A stretch of DNA of 63,503 bases, counting the filler, from Octopus bimaculoides (taxonomy: Eukaryota), in assembly GCF_001194135.2 (NCBI RefSeq). It is 11 parts of 11 records of this genome, joined end to end, with 100 filler letters (N's around TTAATTAATTAA, not from the genome) between each part and the next. Parts side by side here need not be neighbours in the genome. Positions count along the whole stretch, not along the records: positions 50,885 to 58,098 come from NC_068981.1; 10 more parts are not named here. One strand, given 5' to 3'. Under the pieces are notes generated by a model. That model saw nothing but the letters and a program-made list of their open reading frames with translations. It was not told where the DNA came from and ran no database searches. Position 1 is the stretch's first letter, and every line of letters starts with the position of its first letter. Below are positions 50,885 through 57,890 of this stretch, piece by piece. The position numbers and the translations under genes were made by a program.

Positions 50885-51243
50885 AGTTGTCTGCACCTTG
50901 CTGTCAACTTGACAATGTGCATGTCAAATGATGCATCACTACACATGTTGATGCCCAGATCTCTCACTGTTTGTGGTTCTGGGATTGCAGTACCTCCAGG
51001 CCCTGTGTATGCCAGTTGGGAGGTACTTGTGGTCTTGTAGCGCAGTACTTGAAATTTTTTTGCATTGAACTGCATATTATTTTGCTCTGCCCACTCATAT
51101 ATTGCATTTAGGTCATTCTGCAGGCTTACAATATCATCAGGATTCTTTATTGCCTGAGATATCTTTGTGTCATCAGCATAGCTAGTGACAGTGGCTCTCC
51201 GAGTGACCGTGGGCATGTCCAGAAGGGCCACTATGAACAGTAG
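50885..51243 (-). mobile_element. CR1/L2-like LINE reverse transcriptase fragment
   Basis: uninterrupted frame LLFIVALLDMP...SYADDTKI...LQNDLNAIYEWAEQNNMQFNAKKFQVL...RDLGI; YADD motif; cut by a gap. Confidence 0.92.
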
Positions 51244-51284
51244 TGTACAAATATATATATATATATATATATACACGTGTCTGT

Positions 51285-51430
51285 ATGGTAAGTAGCTTGC
51301 TTATCAGCCACATCGTTCTAGGTTCAGCCCTACTGCATGGCACCTTGGGCAAGTGTCTTATACTATATCCTCGGCCCGACCAAGGCCTTGTGAGTGGATT
51401 TGGTAGACGCAAACTGAAAGTAGCCCGTCG
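51285..51430 (+). mobile_element. SINE 5' half
   Basis: same family as 34545. Confidence 0.8.
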
Positions 51431-51473
51431 TATATATATATATATATATATGCATATATGTGTGTGTGTGTGT

Positions 51474-51510
<37 letters not shown>

Positions 51511-52869
51511 AAAATAAGGATATCCAGAGGTGATACATTACGATCGTTTCAAGTGACTCCATTCAATTGAACAATGCAGAGCTGCATAAATAAATAGAAT
51601 TTATTTAATCAGTCGGATATATTTGCATAATTTTACCTAAATCCTCTAAAAGGGTAATAAGACAAAGTGCATGGTTTATTCACTTCAGCCTAGAAGCTTT
51701 GATTTTATTCACTTTATTTGAAACTGTACAGATAATTCTGCACTAATTTTTGGTGCCTCAACTTAAGTACCTAAGTCGTCTGAATCTCCATTATAAATAT
51801 ATATATATATATATATANNNNNNNNNNNNNNNNNNNNNNNNNNNNNNNNNNNNNNNNNNNNNNNNNNNNNNNNNNNNNNNNNNNNNNNNNNNNNNNNNNN
51901 NNNNNNNNNNNNNNNNNNNNNNNNNNNNNNNNNNNNNNNNNNNNNNNNNNNNNNNNNNNNNNNNNNNNNNNNNNNNNNNNNNNNNNNNNNNNNNNNNNNN
52001 NNNNNNNNNNNNNNNNNNNNNNNNNNNNNNNNNNNNNNNNNNNNNNNNNNNNNNNNNNNNNNNNNNNNNNNNNNNNNNNNNNNNNNNNNNNNNNNNNNNN
52101 NNNNNNNNNNNNNNNNNNNNNNNNNNNNNNNNNNNNNNNNNNNNNNNNNNNNNNNNNNNNNNNNNNNNNNNNNNNNNNNNNNNNNNNNNNNNNNNNNNNN
52201 NNNNNNNNNNNNNNNNNNNNNNNNNNNNNNNNNNNNNNNNNNNNNNNNNNNNNNNNNNNNNNNNNNNNNNNNNNNNNNNNNNNNNNNNNNNNNNNNNNNN
52301 NNNNNNNNNNNNNNNNNNNNNNNNNNNNNNNNNNNNNNNNNNNNNNNNNNNNNNNNNNNNNNNNNNNNNNNNNNNNNNNNNNNNNNNNNNNNNNNNNNNN
52401 NNNNNNNNNNNNATGCATACATACATATATACATACATACATACATACATACATACATACATACATACATACATACATACATGCATATATACACATATAC
52501 ATCCATACAACTATCTGTCTGACATGTTGAATGTAAATACGAAAATTGTTAAAAGAAAGAAATATGCAATATTAGTGGTATAAATTAATAGGGCATTGGA
52601 GTTTAAAACGAGTTGAAGCAAAATTAAATTTAAATTAAAATTAATTATAAAATTAAGCTAAAGTACTAAATACATTGTTTTATGCAATTTGAATATAAAT
52701 AATCCTTGTAGGCCTGACTATATATGATTGTTTGAAAAGTTGAGGTACATACTAAGTCAATGCAACGCAAAACACATTTAAGTATTGAATGGAGTGAGTA
52801 TAAATAAATATTGATGACTATTAAATATTAATATTGATATTAAAATTAGTGGTCACCGTTTGTAAGAGA

Positions 52870-53205
52870 CGTTTTTTTCCACAGCTCGTCTCTTTGACTG
52901 AGCTGCAGTCCTGGATAAGGCGTAGACCGAGGCGGAGGCGCTTGGCACCTCTAGTGCCGTCAAGCGCTCGCAGCCCTCCGCCAGGCGGGCAATGCAGTCG
53001 GTGATAGTTCCCCTCTAGCTTTCTATAGAGAGCTAGGGGAGGGAAAGTGCGACGATGTTCTCGGGAAAACTCTGGACGTCGATGAAGATCAACTAACCGG
53101 TCTGTTTCGGAGAACTTTCGGGCCTGGACCTATGGATAACTTCCAGAAATCCCTTGCTTAGGAGTGCTACCGAGGGGCGCTGCCTGTTCGGGATAAACTT
53201 TACAA
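52870..53205 (+). mobile_element. Tx1/L1-like LINE fragment, same family as 20335
   Basis: GC-rich island; LGKTLDVDEDQLTGLFRRTFGPGPMDNFQKSLA*ECYRGALPVRDKLY. Confidence 0.7.
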
Positions 53206-53495: not shown

Positions 53496-54090
53496 AGTGT
53501 GTGTATGTGTCAGTGTGTGAAACTGATAACTTAATACAATCTATGATAAAAATTTAGTATAAATTTTTATTAAAATACCAGCGTATCTGAGCAAAATAAT
53601 GCTGTTCTGCTTTACCACCTCTGACTGTCACCCACACCCACTCCGTTTATTCTTTACTCTCCTTTCCCTAGTGTAACCGACAAGTGCATTGTGTGTGAGA
53701 CACAAAACCCGTGCATAATCATACAAAGATGAATAGAGACTTTACTGTGCGTCAAATTCAAACACGTCTCGTCAAATTCGTATATTTCTGCCCAAGGAGG
53801 ACAGATTCGTCCTTTCTCACTAACTAAAGAAAACCAAATATCAAGATTTAGTCTGAAAACAAACAAATAAATAAATAAATAAATAACAACCAAGGAGGTA
53901 TGTATGGCACCTGAAACAAACTATAATTCGCTGAAGTTGGCAAGAGAGCGCAAGTGGAAGCCTTCCACATGCGAAGACTAATTTAGTCCGGACTGCCACT
54001 CTCAGGAACAAGTACAGGCTAAGGATTAAACGTTTGTGACCCCGAGATTTATGCTAATGATATAGAAGTGTGTCCGGCACTGTGATTGAT

Positions 54091-54167
54091 TCAGAAGAGC
54101 TTGCAATACAATTGAGATACTCCTTCACTTTCTGCAAAGGACAATGCATCTCCAATATTTGCTTCGT
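54091..54167 (-). CDS. Probable terminal exon of the acidic-repeat gene
   Basis: tatttgtatag acceptor, phase 1 compatible with copy A; (D)EANIGDALSFAESEGVSQLYCKLF*; a degenerate duplicate lies next to copy C. Confidence 0.6.
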
Positions 54168-54429
54168 CTATACAAATATAGACTTAGTGACGTAACTCCA
54201 TTAACATAAACACACACATAAACACACGCATATATATGTATGTGTGTTATGTACATGCATATCTGTATATGTGTGTATCTGTATATATGTATATGTGTGT
54301 GTCTTTGTATGTAGTGTGTATGGGTGCGCCTATGTATGTATGTATGTATGTATGTATGTATGTATGTGTGTGTGTATGTATGTATGTATGTGTGTGTGTA
54401 TGTATGTATGTATGTATGTATGTACTTTT

Positions 54430-55045
54430 CTCTTAATTATTTGAATTCTTCCTCTGAGGAAGGGGCTAGTTTCTAAGAAAGATACGAAATTCCGTCGCTG
54501 GAATGTAAGTAACAAAAACAATGCCATTTTTAACTCGAGAAAAGCCTTATATATTTTTACAGTCACGTTTAGAAACTGTATTTATAATATACGTGTTAGC
54601 CTCTTAATTTTGTTTTCTGAAAACCCTAGCTTATCCAGTTTGTCTTAGGCATTTACACACAAACCGAAGTGTAGCGATTATTATTGTGATAAATGTAAAT
54701 TTATAATCTGGGTATGGAAGCTGGAGGTTTCAAGCAGTTGTCGGTAGTTATCCTCTTTCTACTTGATTTTCAAAGTGATATTCACATCAGCAAGGCGGTT
54801 GACGGCACACTTTTTCTTGTCTCTTTTAAACAACCGGTGTGTTATGTTTACACTTGGCAGATGTTTTGATAGGAGTGTTCCACCAATATTCCTTGTGTTG
54901 ATGCTTTTGTATGTATTCAACAACAGGGTGATTCTCTATATTTATTCCAAGACACTCTTTTTTCGAATGGTATTCTATATTGTATTTGCCACAACGTCAT
55001 ATCGCATACGGATGTTGTATCTTGACAACGCCGCATCGCATAAGG
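54430..55045 (-). mobile_element. REL-type non-LTR fragment of the same family as 48505, decayed, in the intron between exon A and the terminal exon
   Basis: KEYWWNTPIKTSAKCKHN, ADVNITLKI, LLENLQL.YPDYKF.FI, LDKLGFSE, TVKIYKAF; (TACA)n on both sides. Confidence 0.75.
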
Positions 55046-55113
55046 AGGTAGTGTATATATGTATGTATGTGCGCATGTATGTATGTATATATGTATGTGT
55101 ATGTAATTCATAC

Positions 55114-55191
55114 CTAGTGTCTCCAGCTCTAAATCCTCTGTCTCCTCAGCCTCGGACTCTAACTCTTCTGGTATCGCATTCTCTTCAAATT
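55114..55191 (-). CDS. 78-nt acidic repeat exon, copy A, unknown gene
   Basis: ccatttctctag / GTATGA; phase 1-1; (E)FEENAIPEELESEAEETEDLELETL. Confidence 0.75.
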
Positions 55192-55309
55192 CTAGAGAAA
55201 TGGAAAGGAAAACTTTTACATAAAATTTCAATATCAAATATTTCAAGTTTTCTATGCTATTTGAGACTGTATATAAAATACATTCACAATCATAGAAAGT
55301 ATGTGATGT

Positions 55310-55376
<67 letters not shown>

Positions 55377-55423
55377 ATATATGTTGGGATATACGTGTGT
55401 ATATATGTATATGTAATTCATAC

Positions 55424-55501
55424 CCGGTGTCTCCATTTCTAAATTTTCCATCTCTTCGGCCTCAGCCTCTAACTCTTCTGGTATCGTATACTCTTCGAAT
55501 G
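55424..55501 (-). CDS. 78-nt acidic repeat exon, copy B, unknown gene
   Basis: ccatttctctag / GTATGA; phase 1-1; (A)FEEYTIPEELEAEAEEMENLEMETP. Confidence 0.75.
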
Positions 55502-55954
55502 CTAGAGAAATGGAATGGATGAAATATTTTATATTAAATTATAAATAATAAATATTTACAATATCAGAATATTTATGTACAAGTAGTTCGAAATCTGCAG
55601 CTTGTTTAACCTCATAAAATCTTCATATTACAAATAATCATTCCAACTCTTGGATCTATTCCATTTCAATCACACTGTTTAGTTTAAAAAAGAAATTAAT
55701 TAAAAACTCTGATTGAGATGGGTCCCAACACTTTGTTGTGTTAGTGGATACTTCGTTGACAAATTTTTCTGCAAAGTGATCGCGTAAACATATAATTTAC
55801 AAATACAGACCATTACCGCCACCATTACAATCATCATCACCACCACCAATATTCCTGGTAGTATTGATAATAACAGTGACAGAAGGTGCAGCAACATTGG
55901 TAATAGTATTATTATTGGGAGTAGCATTATTTATATTAGTATCAGCAAATAAGG

Positions 55955-56090
55955 AAGAGAGCTGGCAGAATCGTTTGCAAAATGCTTAACGTCATTTCGA
56001 CCGTCTTTACGTTCTGAGTTCAAATTCCGCCGAGGTTGACTATACCTTTCATCCTTTCAGAGTCGATAAAATAAATACCAGTTGATCTTA
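55955..56090 (+). mobile_element. tRNA-derived SINE
   Basis: gagctggcagaatcgtt...gttctgagttcaaattccgccgagg. Confidence 0.8.
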
Positions 56091-56962
56091 AGCTAAAATT
56101 TGAAACCAATATTAGTATCAGAATTGGCTTCAAAAGAAATACAGCAGAAATAGTTGTAGAGGTAGATTTATGAGTATTAGTCAGGATTAATACTAGTCAA
56201 GTGTAGTTACGTTTGGTTTGGTTTCAGTGAGGTTGCGTACAGTATTCTTTATGTTGGTGTATTTAGATATTTTATGTCTATCGTGGAAAGGACATTTTTT
56301 TGTTTGCGTAGTGTTGCTTATCAAGTTACATGGTTTTTATTTTTTATCTGTAATCCTATTGTAAGTACTTAAGATTGAATTATTTTCTTCTACCTTTCTC
56401 TTGTTTCTTAGTCCCTCTTTATCTCTCTCTTTCAATTGTTCTCTTTCTGCTTCCTTTTCAAAATACTTATAAAATGCCTCGGCATCTACTCAACTTTAGA
56501 CATTAGGTATCTGTAACATAATAAATAAAATGCTTTCTGATGATCCATTGTAATTAAGCATCGAATTGCACTTGGAGCAACCGATGCAGAGCTCCAAACG
56601 ACCACACTGGTGAAACGTACGCAGGAACTCATGATACTTTCCTGTCCCTTTCTATATTATGTAACTTGCGAAGTTGTTAATAATATGCACAATAGTAAAA
56701 GTGTATATATGTGGAGCCTTTAACACCTGTTGTATTTATTTCAAGACACTGATAAGGTAAAGTGCAAGACTGCGTGTTTCTACACCTGTTGTGTAATTAT
56801 TACAGCATTTTTCTGAAATGCCGATTTGTTAAATAATTCATTAAATACGATGTTCTGTGCTTAATTATTATTATTTCTATTATTTGACACGTATTCCGCA
56901 CACTGGCCTATCCTTGAAATATCCGTAGGTAATATGGAATGATTTTCAACATTAAGATAGAT

Positions 56963-57010
56963 TCAGAAGAAGAGCTTGCAATGCATTCAAGTGGCTCCTG
57001 CAGTTTCTGT
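56963..57010 (-). pseudogene. Degenerate duplicate of the YCKLF terminal exon
   Basis: gaa act gca gga gcc act TGA atg cat tgc aag ctc ttc ttc tga aligns with gaa agt gaa gga gta tct caa ttg tat tgc aag ctc ttc tga; in-frame premature stop. Confidence 0.55.
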
Positions 57011-57056
57011 ATTCATGATGTATACACAGGCGTATACATACGTGTATAATTCATAC

Positions 57057-57134
57057 CTGGGGTTTCCAGCTCTAAATTCTTCGTCTCCTCAGCCTCAGAC
57101 TCTAATTCCTCTGGTATCGTATTCTCTGCGAATT
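57057..57134 (-). CDS. 78-nt acidic repeat exon, copy C, unknown gene
   Basis: ctgtttctctag acceptor, GTATGA donor; phase 1-1; (E)FAENTIPEELESEAEETKNLELETP. Confidence 0.75.
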
Positions 57135-57569
57135 CTAGAGAAACAGAATGCAGGAAGTTTATTATTCAAATTTTTTATATTTAATGTTTAAAGTGTTTTA
57201 TGCTACTTGAATATTTGAGGCATAATACAAAGACCATGTAAAATTAAACAACACAACTGACATACGGATTTAAATCTATGCTTAACTAGTAAATATCAGA
57301 ATGTTTATGAACAATTACTCCGTCGCAGTTATATCTTTATCTCTCTATCTGTCAATCTATCTATCTATTTGTGTATGTACATGTGTGCGCCTGTGTGTGT
57401 GTGCGTGTATGTGTATGTGTGTGTGAGTGTCTGTGTGTGCGTACAAACACAGAGACACAGTAAGAGAGAAACTGAGATATATAGACAAAAACAGACATTT
57501 TATGGTTTTATGTATGTATCCATTACACATGTGTATATAGTGTGTGTGTATTTGTGTGTGTGCGTATGT

Positions 57570-57890
57570 AACCCCTCATTTGAGCACCATTTTCATCTAC
57601 CGGGTTGTTCAGGTAGTAACACTCCATGACCACAGCATAAATTTGCTTGCTCCATCTACGCCGTGTGTGGTGGTCCCTTTCTGGATATCGACAGGCTGGA
57701 GCCGAACCAGAATCTCTGAGCCTACCGGGTGCAACACTGTCACCATCAATGGCTTCAGTTTCATTACCACAGTTATTCACAATATTTTGTTTTTTTCATT
57801 GTCACTCATATGAGGTATCGATTATCAGGTTGCACAATTACCAGTGTTTTTATTGTGTATCATTAATCAGGACATGGAGAAGCTCCACCC
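57570..57890 (-). mobile_element. 5' end / ORF start of an R4/Dong-like element
   Basis: RRRWSKQIYAVVMECYYLNNPVDENGAQMRGY resembles the N-terminal R.KW......VM.CYY.....RGY motif of R4-clade ORFs. Confidence 0.65.

What the first reader, a model, noticed from the sequence alone, without database searches (positions are those of the whole stretch)
54091..57134. Unrecognised gene built from tandem-duplicated 78-nt acidic cassette exons
Seen: three minus-strand 78-nt segments (57134-57057, 55501-55424, 55191-55114). Each has a tttctctag acceptor, the same GTATGA donor, phase 1-1 symmetry, and no stop or indel. They encode x-F[EA]E[NY][TA]IPEELE[SA]EAEE..[ND]LE[LM]ET[PL], with 13 of 26 residues acidic in copy A. 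Copies A and C differ at 12 sites, 7 of them synonymous, well above the roughly one quarter expected for unconstrained sequence. A phase-compatible terminal exon gives ...DEANIGDALSFAESEGVSQLYCKLF*. The ORF track misses this because it is split by introns. Inference: a lineage-specific protein whose acidic-repeat number can be changed by exon duplication or skipping. I cannot name a family, and the 5' exons are not identified in this scaffold piece.
Basis: partly seen in the sequence, partly recalled or inferred. Interest (0 to 1): 0.75.

Follow-up and report, generated by a model that had tools for sequence, protein, structure and literature searches.

The report
Octopus orphan gene's acidic cassette exons
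Three duplicated 78-base segments in this octopus DNA look like real small exons of a glutamate-rich gene found only in octopus; the same exons are already in an uncharacterised Octopus vulgaris gene model, so the find is plausible but fairly ordinary, and expression is unproven.

Summary
Three minus-strand 78-nt units sit at 57134-57057, 55501-55424 and 55191-55114. All have a tttctctag acceptor, a GTATGA donor and one open sense frame in phase 1-1. A phase-compatible stop-bearing exon follows at 54167-54091.

An exhaustive search of 1.84 billion proteins gave one relative: CAI9715271.1, "hypothetical predicted protein" of Octopus vulgaris (E 2.6e-27). Its 99-kb locus is colinear with the window. 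Its model splices the orthologues of the three units together in the same order. So the gene is not wholly unrecognised.

That locus holds at least seven more cassette-type exons or exon relics. Six are intact, 54, 75 or 78 nt long and in phase 1. One is a decayed copy.

Evidence for coding constraint is suggestive only:
- Paralogue changes are enriched for synonymous sites (12 of 21 against 6.6 expected, P=0.008; P=0.055 without CpG sites).
- Between the two species the exons evolve like the introns (6.1% against 7.6% divergence; 6 synonymous, 13 not).

The O. vulgaris model skips the proposed terminal exon. It also looks chimeric across a 99.5-99.98% identical segmental duplication. No RNA data could be reached.

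Best reading (about 0.6): real symmetric cassette exons of an Octopus-restricted, disordered polyanionic protein, built by tandem exon duplication.

The parts
57057..57134 (-). Cassette unit 1, a 78-nt candidate exon in phase 1-1 encoding (x)FAENTIPEELESEAEETKNLELETP. Acceptor ttctgtttctctag, donor GTATGA.
   Evidence: The orthologue at L001 42300-42377 is a coding exon of CAI9715271.1, with 73 of 78 nt identical.
55424..55501 (-). Cassette unit 2, 78 nt in phase 1-1, encoding (A)FEEYTIPEELEAEAEEMENLEMETP.
   Evidence: The orthologue is at L001 43649-43726, with 71 of 78 nt identical. The O. vulgaris model uses an acceptor 24 nt further upstream there, and that acceptor's AG is absent from the window.
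55114..55191 (-). Cassette unit 3, 78 nt in phase 1-1, encoding (E)FEENAIPEELESEAEETEDLELETL. It has 13 acidic residues of 26.
   Evidence: The orthologue is at L001 43903-43980, with 76 of 78 nt identical.
54091..54167 (-). Candidate terminal exon, 77 nt including TGA, encoding (D)EANIGDALSFAESEGVSQLYCKLF*. An alternative in-phase acceptor gives an exon start at 54131 and the peptide (E)SEGVSQLYCKLF*.
   Evidence: The ORF and stop are intact in O. vulgaris at L001 53563-53639, but the O. vulgaris model does not use it as an exon. Its use is inferred, not shown.
56956..57009 (-). Decayed copy of the 3' part of the terminal exon, 48 nt downstream of unit 1. It has an in-frame TGA and a 3-nt insertion (ETAGAT*MHCKLFF*).
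   Evidence: repeat D8, 79%; 76% over 54 nt, E 3e-4. It is also present in O. vulgaris with the same TGA.
57033..57210 (-). Full duplicated block around unit 1: the exon plus about 76 nt of upstream and about 24 nt of downstream intron.
   Evidence: 78% identical to 55264-55088.
55365..55558 (-). Full duplicated block around unit 2. It lies 310 nt from block 3, start to start.
   Evidence: (repeat D6) and 14: 78% identical over 197 nt to 55243-55051.
55051..55264 (-). Full duplicated block around unit 3.
53566..53651 (-). Two AATAAA motifs, starting at 53651 and 53571, which lie 440 and 520 nt after the stop. They are possible polyadenylation signals if 54167-54091 is the last exon.
   Evidence: Both are kept in O. 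vulgaris, which is unsurprising at about 92% identity. Inference only.

Best explanation
The piece is the 3' part of an Octopus-restricted protein-coding gene whose body is an array of small symmetric (phase 1-1) exons.

Shown:
- Each exon encodes about 26 residues of glutamate-rich, low-complexity peptide.
- The array grew by tandem duplication of blocks made of an exon plus its flanking intron.
- One old duplication also copied the terminal exon. That copy has since decayed, while the copied cassette stayed intact.
- The gene is the orthologue of the O. vulgaris model CAI9715271.1.

Inferred:
- Every exon starts and ends in phase 1 and has a length divisible by three. Exons can therefore be added, lost or skipped without breaking the frame. 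Repeat number would set the length and charge of a disordered polyanionic segment.
- The product probably works through bulk charge or length, as a spacer, a cation- or partner-binding polyanion, or an entropic spring, rather than through a folded domain.
- The transcript probably ends at 54091 in ...SQLYCKLF*.

Not shown: expression, splicing, the 5' end and the function.
For: 1. Anatomy. There are three 78-nt units with canonical, near-identical acceptors and donors and a single open sense frame in phase 1-1.
2. Orthology. The only relative among 1.84 billion representative proteins is O. vulgaris CAI9715271.1 (E 2.6e-27). Its locus L001 is colinear with the window. Its model joins the three orthologous units in the same order, with the predicted junction residues.
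3. Family. The O. vulgaris locus has further exons with the same boundaries (...ttctctag|AA...CCAG|gtatga...), of 75, 75, 78, 78 and 54 nt. They align as one peptide family with in-frame indels only.
4. Substitution pattern. Synonymous changes among the paralogues are in excess: 12 of 21 against 6.6 expected, P=0.008. For changes that predate the species split the figures are 11 of 18 against 5.8, P=0.006.
5. Splice flanks. These are better conserved than the exon bodies for the diverged paralogue m7: 30 of 32 against 51 of 78, P=0.001.
6. Decayed copies as an internal control. A fourth unit in O. vulgaris has its acceptor changed from AG to GG, a 30-nt deletion and a broken donor. The relic terminal exon carries a stop. 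Both show what unmaintained copies look like, in contrast to the six intact orthologous units.
7. Distribution. Copies are local and on one strand. The SINE-like repeat in the same piece, by contrast, hits L001 nine or more times on both strands.
8. Structure. The AF2 model is low-confidence (pLDDT 65, pTM 0.20) with one short helix per unit, which fits a disordered chain. There is no Pfam or PDB match.
Against: - Between the window species and O. vulgaris the exons are no better conserved than the introns: 19 mismatches in 310 nt (6.1%) against 7.6%, Fisher p=0.43.
- The absence of indels in the exons is only P=0.083.
- The substitutions are 6 synonymous to 13 non-synonymous. For the three units that is 4 of 14 against 3.7 expected, which is as neutral sequence would give.
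- Removing CpG-involved sites weakens the paralogue signal to P=0.055.
- The antisense frame that shares third codon positions also gives low dN/dS, although it is not a long ORF and has no splice sites.
- The O. vulgaris model is itself doubtful. It starts at an ATG inside a cassette exon, reads its last cassette out of frame, skips the proposed terminal exon, and bridges a 99.5-99.98% identical segmental duplicate.
- That model comes from a pipeline that mixes transcripts with ab initio predictions (PMC10700109).
- No transcript data were reachable, and no homologue was found in any other annotated proteome.
Confidence: 0.6

Rival explanations
1. The units are a dead or never-functional exon array. 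They would be remnants of duplicated exons, from a decaying gene or a pseudogene cluster, that still look spliceable only because too little time has passed. On this reading the O. vulgaris 'gene' is a gene-predictor artefact.
For: - Evolution between the species looks neutral: 6.1% against 7.6% divergence, and 6 synonymous to 13 non-synonymous changes.
- Degenerate copies exist in the same locus: u4x, the 5'-truncated copy at L001 40.6 kb, and the relic terminal exon.
- The O. vulgaris model has an arbitrary internal start, an out-of-frame last cassette, and runs across a near-identical duplication.
- No other homologous protein is known in 5.8 billion clusters.
- The synonymous excess is borderline once CpG sites are removed.
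Against: - The paralogues are old, at about 20-30% divergence in exons and flanks. All three nevertheless keep their length, frame and both splice sites in both species.
- More diverged family members differ by in-frame indels only.
- Old changes show a synonymous excess, P=0.006.
- For m7, the splice flanks are conserved above the exon body.
Confidence: 0.27
2. The 78-nt unit is part of a dispersed repeat or transposable element, and its splice-like ends and open frame are incidental.
For: - The piece is full of repeats: SINE-like elements, a LINE reverse-transcriptase fragment and microsatellites right after each donor.
- The unit is multi-copy in the O. vulgaris locus.
Against: - In 99 kb of O. 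vulgaris, all copies found by nucleotide similarity lie in one cluster on one strand. The true dispersed repeat of the piece (51266-51487) hits nine or more places on both strands.
- Only one protein in 1.84 billion representatives carries the motif.
- There is no transposable-element protein similarity.
- An exact-pattern scan of the JGI metagenome contigs found nothing, but that collection is a poor test for an octopus.
Confidence: 0.05
3. The units are the acidic (poly-E-like) spring exons of a giant titin/sallimus-type muscle gene, not of a small orphan gene.
For: - The units are small, repeated, symmetric exons of about 26 residues, rich in Glu, with a P+E+V+K+A fraction of 0.56-0.62.
- That fraction is above the 0.54 cut-off used to find titin PEVK exons (PMC6469411).
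- Such exons are notoriously missed by gene predictors (same paper).
Against: - Val and Lys are almost absent, so the ratio is carried by Glu and Ala.
- A conserved in-phase stop exon follows directly.
- The O. vulgaris product has no Pfam domain, and the 99-kb locus holds no other gene.
- No titin or any other protein was hit by the exhaustive search.
Confidence: 0.03
4. The real coding strand is the plus strand, where an open frame also runs through every unit.
For: Plus-strand ORFs of 69-217 aa cover all three units.
Against: - That frame shows dN/dS of 1.9-3.6 among the copies.
- Its openness follows automatically from the GAR-rich sense strand.
- The ORFs run on into microsatellites.
- There are no plus-strand splice signals at the unit borders.
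Confidence: 0.02

Closest known systems
Octopus vulgaris hypothetical predicted protein CAI9715271.1 (UniProt A0AA36AH76), on OX597814.1:67.39-67.49 Mb of GCA_951406725.2
   Same: - The locus is orthologous. It is colinear with the window, with 6-8% mismatches in aligned DNA (BLAST blocks 83-91% identical).
- The three cassette units are present, intact and used as consecutive exons.
- The acceptor and donor sequences are the same.
- The terminal-exon ORF and the relic copy are also present.
   Different: - The model uses an acceptor 24 nt upstream for unit 2.
- It skips the proposed terminal exon and continues into a near-identical 34.6-kb segmental duplicate.
- The O. vulgaris locus has an extra 8.7 kb, with a decayed fourth unit, between unit 3 and the terminal exon.
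- No function is known.
Titin PEVK / poly-E exon array (vertebrate TTN)
   Same: - It works alike: many short, repeated, in-frame exons of about 26-28 residues encode a disordered, highly charged segment.
- Exon duplication and loss change its length.
- Gene predictors annotate it poorly (PMC6469411; poly-E peptides of 28 residues in PMC9100103).
   Different: - There is no sequence similarity.
- The PPAK motif, Val and Lys are missing.
- A stop exon follows directly.
- No Ig or Fn3 context was found.
- The gene appears small and restricted to Octopus.
Tandem exon duplication that yields symmetric cassette exons (general class; for example the duplicated exon in COE/EBF genes, PMC2394523)
   Same: Adjacent homologous exons have equal length and phase, with the flanking intron duplicated along with them (literature hit).
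   Different: Classical cases are often mutually exclusive alternatives that encode part of a folded domain. Here the O. vulgaris model includes the copies additively, and they encode a low-complexity repeat. Alternative use was not tested.
CaaX-box prenylated proteins (a lead from general knowledge, not tested)
   Same: The proposed product ends in C-K-L-F. This has Cys at position -4, an aliphatic residue at a2, and Phe as X, which is an accepted X residue for geranylgeranyltransferase I. YCKLF* is identical in O. vulgaris.
   Different: A four-residue match is weak evidence. The exon's use is unproven, and its conservation is no higher than that of the flanking non-coding DNA.

Membership tests
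Orthologue of the O. vulgaris gene that encodes CAI9715271.1 | Significant protein similarity over the cassette units | tested here: met
   phmmer gave E 2.6e-27 and 111 bits. It was the only hit in 1.84 billion representatives.
Orthologue of the O. vulgaris gene that encodes CAI9715271.1 | Colinear flanking and intronic DNA (positional orthology) | tested here: met
   Window 57912-55052 aligns with L001 41388-44042. Window 55098-53199 aligns with L001 52730-54491. BLAST identity is 83-91%.
Orthologue of the O. vulgaris gene that encodes CAI9715271.1 | Same exon boundaries | tested here: met
   Units 1 and 3 have identical boundaries. Unit 2 has the same canonical site, but the model uses an acceptor 24 nt upstream that is specific to O. 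vulgaris.
Orthologue of the O. vulgaris gene that encodes CAI9715271.1 | Same 3' end | tested here: not met
   The model skips the orthologue of 54167-54091 (L001 53563-53639) and splices on to an exon at L001 55970.
Tandemly duplicated symmetric cassette exons | Adjacent homologous exons of equal length and phase, with intact splice sites and duplicated intron flanks | tested here: met
Tandemly duplicated symmetric cassette exons | Purifying selection on the encoded peptide | tested here: inconclusive
   Among paralogues P=0.008, or 0.055 without CpG sites. Changes that predate the species split give P=0.006. Between the species the pattern looks neutral.
Tandemly duplicated symmetric cassette exons | Transcribed and spliced, with inclusion or skipping observed | not testable with these tools
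   No cephalopod RNA data could be reached. The protein collections hold no transcript-derived relative.
Titin-type PEVK / poly-E spring exons | PEVK(A) fraction of at least 0.54 per short exon | tested here: met
   The fraction is 0.56-0.62, but only because of Glu and Ala. Val is 0 and Lys is 0-1 per unit (criterion from PMC6469411).
Titin-type PEVK / poly-E spring exons | Embedded in a giant gene with Ig or Fn3 domain exons, with sequence similarity to titin, sallimus or twitchin | tested here: not met
   No protein other than P0001 was hit. P0001 has no Pfam domain. The 99-kb locus holds only this gene and one gene of 113 aa. A stop exon follows unit 3.
Dispersed repeat / transposable element | Many copies in both orientations, unlinked to one locus | tested here: not met
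   Within 99 kb of O. vulgaris the copies are clustered on one strand, unlike the SINE-like repeat of the same piece. A genome-wide count was not possible.
Dispersed repeat / transposable element | Similarity to transposable-element proteins or RNA families | tested here: not met
   Pfam gave nothing above threshold. Rfam gave only sub-threshold hits driven by microsatellites.
CaaX prenylation substrates | C-terminal Cys-a-a-X with a permissive a2 and X | tested here: met
   ...YCKLF* is present in the window and in O. vulgaris. The rule itself is recalled from general knowledge.
CaaX prenylation substrates | The protein actually ends there and is prenylated | not testable with these tools
   This needs cDNA and biochemistry.

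The most novel reading that the evidence does not exclude
An Octopus-specific gene makes a polyanionic, disordered protein. Its length would be tuned by how many interchangeable phase-1 cassette exons are present or included, and exon number would differ between sister species. The protein would be anchored to membranes through a C-terminal CKLF prenylation box. That would make it a young, modular 'charge ruler' invented in cephalopods.
Probability: 0.12. Interest if true: 0.5.

Novelty: new member of a known kind. Interest (0 to 1): 0.3.

Why it matters
If the exons are expressed, this is a clean, small example of gene growth by tandem exon duplication in a cephalopod orphan gene. Intact, diverged and decayed copies lie side by side, and exon content differs between sister species. 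That makes it useful for studying how low-complexity proteins arise and how gene predictors handle them.

It also flags a probable error in the O. vulgaris annotation. The model has a chimeric span across a near-identical segmental duplicate, an internal start codon, an out-of-frame last cassette and a skipped stop exon.

No function is known, and nothing here bears on a long-standing open question.

Tried and rejected
- Word-indexed protein search with the 102-aa conceptual product found nothing. A control search with the LINE reverse-transcriptase fragment of the same piece also found nothing, and one search had missed P0001. That negative is therefore uninformative. The exhaustive search was what worked.
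- Searching again with P0001 returned only P0001 itself.
- Pfam and PDB sequence searches found no family.
- Rfam, tRNA and tandem-repeat scans found only microsatellites and sub-threshold miRNA-like hits caused by them.
- An exact-pattern scan of the JGI metagenome contigs for the unit gave 0 hits. That collection is not expected to hold octopus DNA.
- Literature searches for the accession numbers gave nothing, and neither did the supplements of an octopus mucus proteome paper. A generic octopus/acidic search was useless.
- The plus-strand ORF through the units was rejected: dN/dS is above 1 and there are no splice signals.
- Titin-PEVK membership was rejected (see the membership test).
- Nei-Gojobori dN/dS of 0.08-0.14 among the paralogues should not be taken at face value. 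It is inflated by transition bias (16 transitions to 6 transversions) and by CpG sites at codon boundaries. The permutation tests replace it.
- The AF2 single-sequence model has too low a confidence for a fold search, so none was run.
Full report
**What is in the sequence**

On the minus strand the piece holds three 78-nt units. I number them in transcript order: unit 1 is 57134-57057, unit 2 is 55501-55424 and unit 3 is 55191-55114.

Each unit is preceded by ...tttctctag and followed by GTATGA. Of the three sense frames only one is open. It is the frame that enters and leaves in phase 1. The peptides are:
- unit 1: FAENTIPEELESEAEETKNLELETP
- unit 2: FEEYTIPEELEAEAEEMENLEMETP
- unit 3: FEENAIPEELESEAEETEDLELETL

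The junction codons would be Ala (G+CA) and Glu (G+AA). A 77-nt exon at 54167-54091 is phase-compatible and reads (D)EANIGDALSFAESEGVSQLYCKLF*.

The repeat extends beyond the exons. The duplicated blocks are 160-197 nt long and about 78% identical, and they include about 55-75 nt of upstream intron and 25-60 nt of downstream intron. A search of the piece with the peptides finds only these three units.

- A plus-strand frame is open through all three units, as expected opposite a GAR-rich strand. It shows dN/dS above 1 and has no splice signals.
- A decayed copy of the last 54 nt of the terminal exon lies 48 nt after unit 1, at 57009-56956. It has an in-frame TGA and a 3-nt insertion. An old duplication therefore copied a cassette together with the terminal exon. 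The cassette copy stayed intact and the terminal copy decayed.
- The homology between the relic and the terminal exon begins exactly at a second, pyrimidine-rich acceptor inside the proposed terminal exon (ttgtcctttgcag|AAAGTG, exon start 54131). That acceptor is in the same phase and would give ...(E)SEGVSQLYCKLF*. Which acceptor is used cannot be decided here.

**Is it more than chance?**

The duplication itself is beyond doubt, with E values of 3e-29 to 4e-40. The coding signal is weaker.

- Of 22 variable sites, 12 fall on third codon positions.
- I ran a permutation that keeps each change's base and type but moves it to a random matching position. It gives 12 synonymous of 21 against 6.6 expected, P=0.008.
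- Six of the changes involve CpG dinucleotides. In this GAR-rich frame those sit mostly at the boundary between codon positions 3 and 1. Without them the count is 7 of 15 against 4.0 expected, P=0.055.
- The Nei-Gojobori dN/dS of 0.08-0.14 is inflated by the 16:6 transition bias and should not be quoted alone.

**Finding a relative**

The word-indexed protein search found nothing. Neither did a control search with the LINE reverse-transcriptase fragment of the same piece. Because one search had also missed P0001, that tool's negatives mean little here.

The exhaustive phmmer search of 1.84 billion cluster representatives returned exactly one protein (E 2.6e-27). It is CAI9715271.1 / A0AA36AH76, 'Hypothetical predicted protein [Octopus vulgaris]', 238 aa. 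It is encoded over 79.5 kb on chromosome record OX597814.1 of GCA_951406725.2. I fetched that region as locus L001, 99,478 nt. A second search with that protein found only itself among 5.8 billion clusters.

**Comparison with the O. vulgaris locus**

The window's minus strand is colinear with L001:
- window 57912-55052 aligns with L001 41388-44042
- window 55098-53199 aligns with L001 52730-54491

The window therefore comes from an Octopus species about 6-8% diverged from O. vulgaris in alignable DNA. I cannot name the species.

The O. vulgaris model uses the orthologues of all three units as consecutive coding exons, at L001 42300-42377, 43649-43726 and 43903-43980. The junction residues are those predicted from the window. 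For unit 2, however, the model picks an acceptor 24 nt upstream whose AG does not exist in the window. The orthologue of the proposed terminal exon is intact (DEANIGDAFSLAESEGASQLYCKLF*, L001 53563-53639), but the model does not use it.

O. vulgaris has an extra 8.7 kb between unit 3 and that exon. It holds fragments that look like transposable elements, microsatellites and a decayed fourth unit. In that fourth unit the acceptor AG has become GG, 30 nt are deleted and the donor is changed.

**A wider exon family**

L001 contains further exons with the same boundary sequences. Their lengths are 75, 75, 78, 78 and 54 nt, and all are in phase 1-1. Their peptides align with the units as one family, and all indels are in frame. 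Examples are SKGYTIPGVLESEADKTDGFEVDP, LTNTMSKELESQAEDTDNYKTGIP and YKFMIPMPHGEELEAVMQNLETETL.

For the diverged paralogue m7, the 32 nt around the splice sites are far better conserved than the exon body: 30 of 32 against 51 of 78, P=0.001. For the other pairs the difference is not significant. There is an ascertainment caveat, because a gene predictor only keeps frame-compatible exons.

**The O. vulgaris model is itself imperfect**

- It begins at an ATG inside a cassette exon that has its own upstream phase-1 acceptor.
- It reads its last cassette-like unit out of the cassette frame.
- It runs from the unique part of the locus into a 34.6-kb segmental duplicate that is 99.5-99.98% identical to the first part, including an inverted block.

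The annotation pipeline combined Iso-Seq and RNA-seq, protein alignments, and Augustus and GeneMark predictions through EVM (PMC10700109). I cannot tell whether transcripts support this model.

**Between-species test of constraint**

This test was the most independent one available, and it is negative.

| Measure | Candidate exons | Non-coding DNA outside microsatellites |
|---|---|---|
| Mismatches | 19 in 310 nt (6.1%) | 7.6% |
| Fisher test of the difference | p=0.43 | |
| Indels | none (P=0.083 by chance) | 26 events in 3243 nt |

- Exon substitutions, terminal exon included, are 6 synonymous and 13 non-synonymous.
- For the three units that is 4 of 14 against 3.7 expected under the permutation null.
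- Paralogue differences shared by both species, which are therefore older than the split, give 11 synonymous of 18 against 5.8 expected, P=0.006.

The data fit either past constraint followed by relaxed or fast evolution, or simply too few recent changes to see moderate constraint. The two synonymous proportions do not look clearly different, though I did not test that formally.

**What it most likely is and how it works**

I judge it about 60% likely that these are genuine coding cassette exons at the 3' end of an Octopus-restricted gene, built by repeated tandem duplication of exon-plus-intron blocks.

Every member is symmetric in phase 1 and has a length divisible by three. Duplication, loss or skipping of an exon therefore leaves the frame intact. 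The O. vulgaris locus shows gain, divergence and decay of copies side by side.

The product would be a polyanionic, low-complexity chain, with 9-13 acidic and 0-1 basic residues per 25-26. A single-sequence AF2 model has low confidence (pLDDT 65, pTM 0.20) and shows one short helix per unit (PEELESEAEE) in otherwise unstructured chain. There is no Pfam or PDB relative.

Action through bulk charge or length, as a spacer, ion or partner binder, or entropic spring, is inference. The possible C-terminal CaaX-type box (CKLF, identical in O. vulgaris) is a lead from general knowledge, not a finding.

**Rivals**

- A non-functional exon array that a predictor stitched into a gene: about 0.27.
- A dispersed repeat: about 0.05. 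The local, single-strand distribution of copies argues against it, in contrast to the SINE-like element of the same piece.
- Titin-type PEVK or poly-E exons: about 0.03. The architecture is analogous (PMC6469411; PMC9100103), but there is no similarity and no Ig or Fn3 context, and a stop exon follows.
- Plus-strand coding: about 0.02.

**Novelty and verdict**

It is also independently mirrored by an existing, uncharacterised O. vulgaris gene model, so this is a new member of a known kind (tandem exon duplication in a lineage-restricted low-complexity gene), not a new kind of thing.

Expression, the 5' end, the true 3' end and function all remain open. Junction-spanning RNA reads would settle the question quickly. 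Interest: 0.3.

Noticed in passing
window 50885-51230 (minus strand), cut by the piece's edge: Fragment of a non-LTR retrotransposon reverse transcriptase (…SYADDTKISQAIKNPDD…). Pfam RVT_1 gives E 1.9e-5 at 24.9 bits, below the 29.6-bit cut-off. It found no relative in the word-indexed protein search.
   Followed up: partly
window 51266-51487: SINE-like dispersed repeat. It hits the 99-kb O. vulgaris locus at nine or more places on both strands at 72-85% identity. It served as the contrast for what a dispersed repeat looks like here. A second, smaller dispersed element at 55959-56085 hits L001 three times.
   Followed up: partly
window 52849-53203: GC-richer element, 79% identical to two inverted-orientation copies in L001 (30379-30730 and 95267-95618). 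It is probably another transposable-element fragment. Not characterised.
   Followed up: no
window 57523-57780 (minus strand): An 85-aa ORF (…RWSKQIYAVVMECYYLNNPVDENGAQMRGY…) in the intron upstream of unit 1, with no Pfam hit. It lies in DNA that aligns to O. vulgaris at about 87% identity. It is probably an old retroelement fragment.
   Followed up: partly
window 51818-52413: Run of about 600 N (a scaffold gap) flanked by (TA)n and (CATA)n microsatellites. This points to a short-read scaffolded assembly.
   Followed up: no
window 55040-55100, 55300-55400, 54200-54450 and 57330-57445: Every cassette donor (GTATGAATTACA...) runs directly into TACA, CA or TATG microsatellites. These attract sub-threshold Rfam hits to mir-297 and mir-466-type families that are not real. 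The breakpoint of the 8.7-kb difference from O. vulgaris lies in one of these microsatellites.
   Followed up: partly
L001 1-34589 against L001 53900-99478 (O. vulgaris OX597814.1:67.39-67.49 Mb): Near-identical (99.5-99.98%) segmental duplication with an inverted 8.9-kb block. It is either very recent or an assembly artefact. The annotated gene CAI9715271.1 spans it and so looks chimeric. Its start codon lies inside a cassette exon, and its last cassette is read out of frame.
   Followed up: partly
L001 44042-52730: An 8.7-kb segment present in O. vulgaris but absent from the window, between unit 3 and the terminal-exon region. It contains a LINE-tail-like ORF, long (TACA)n tracts and a decayed fourth cassette unit at 52610-52661.
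   Followed up: partly
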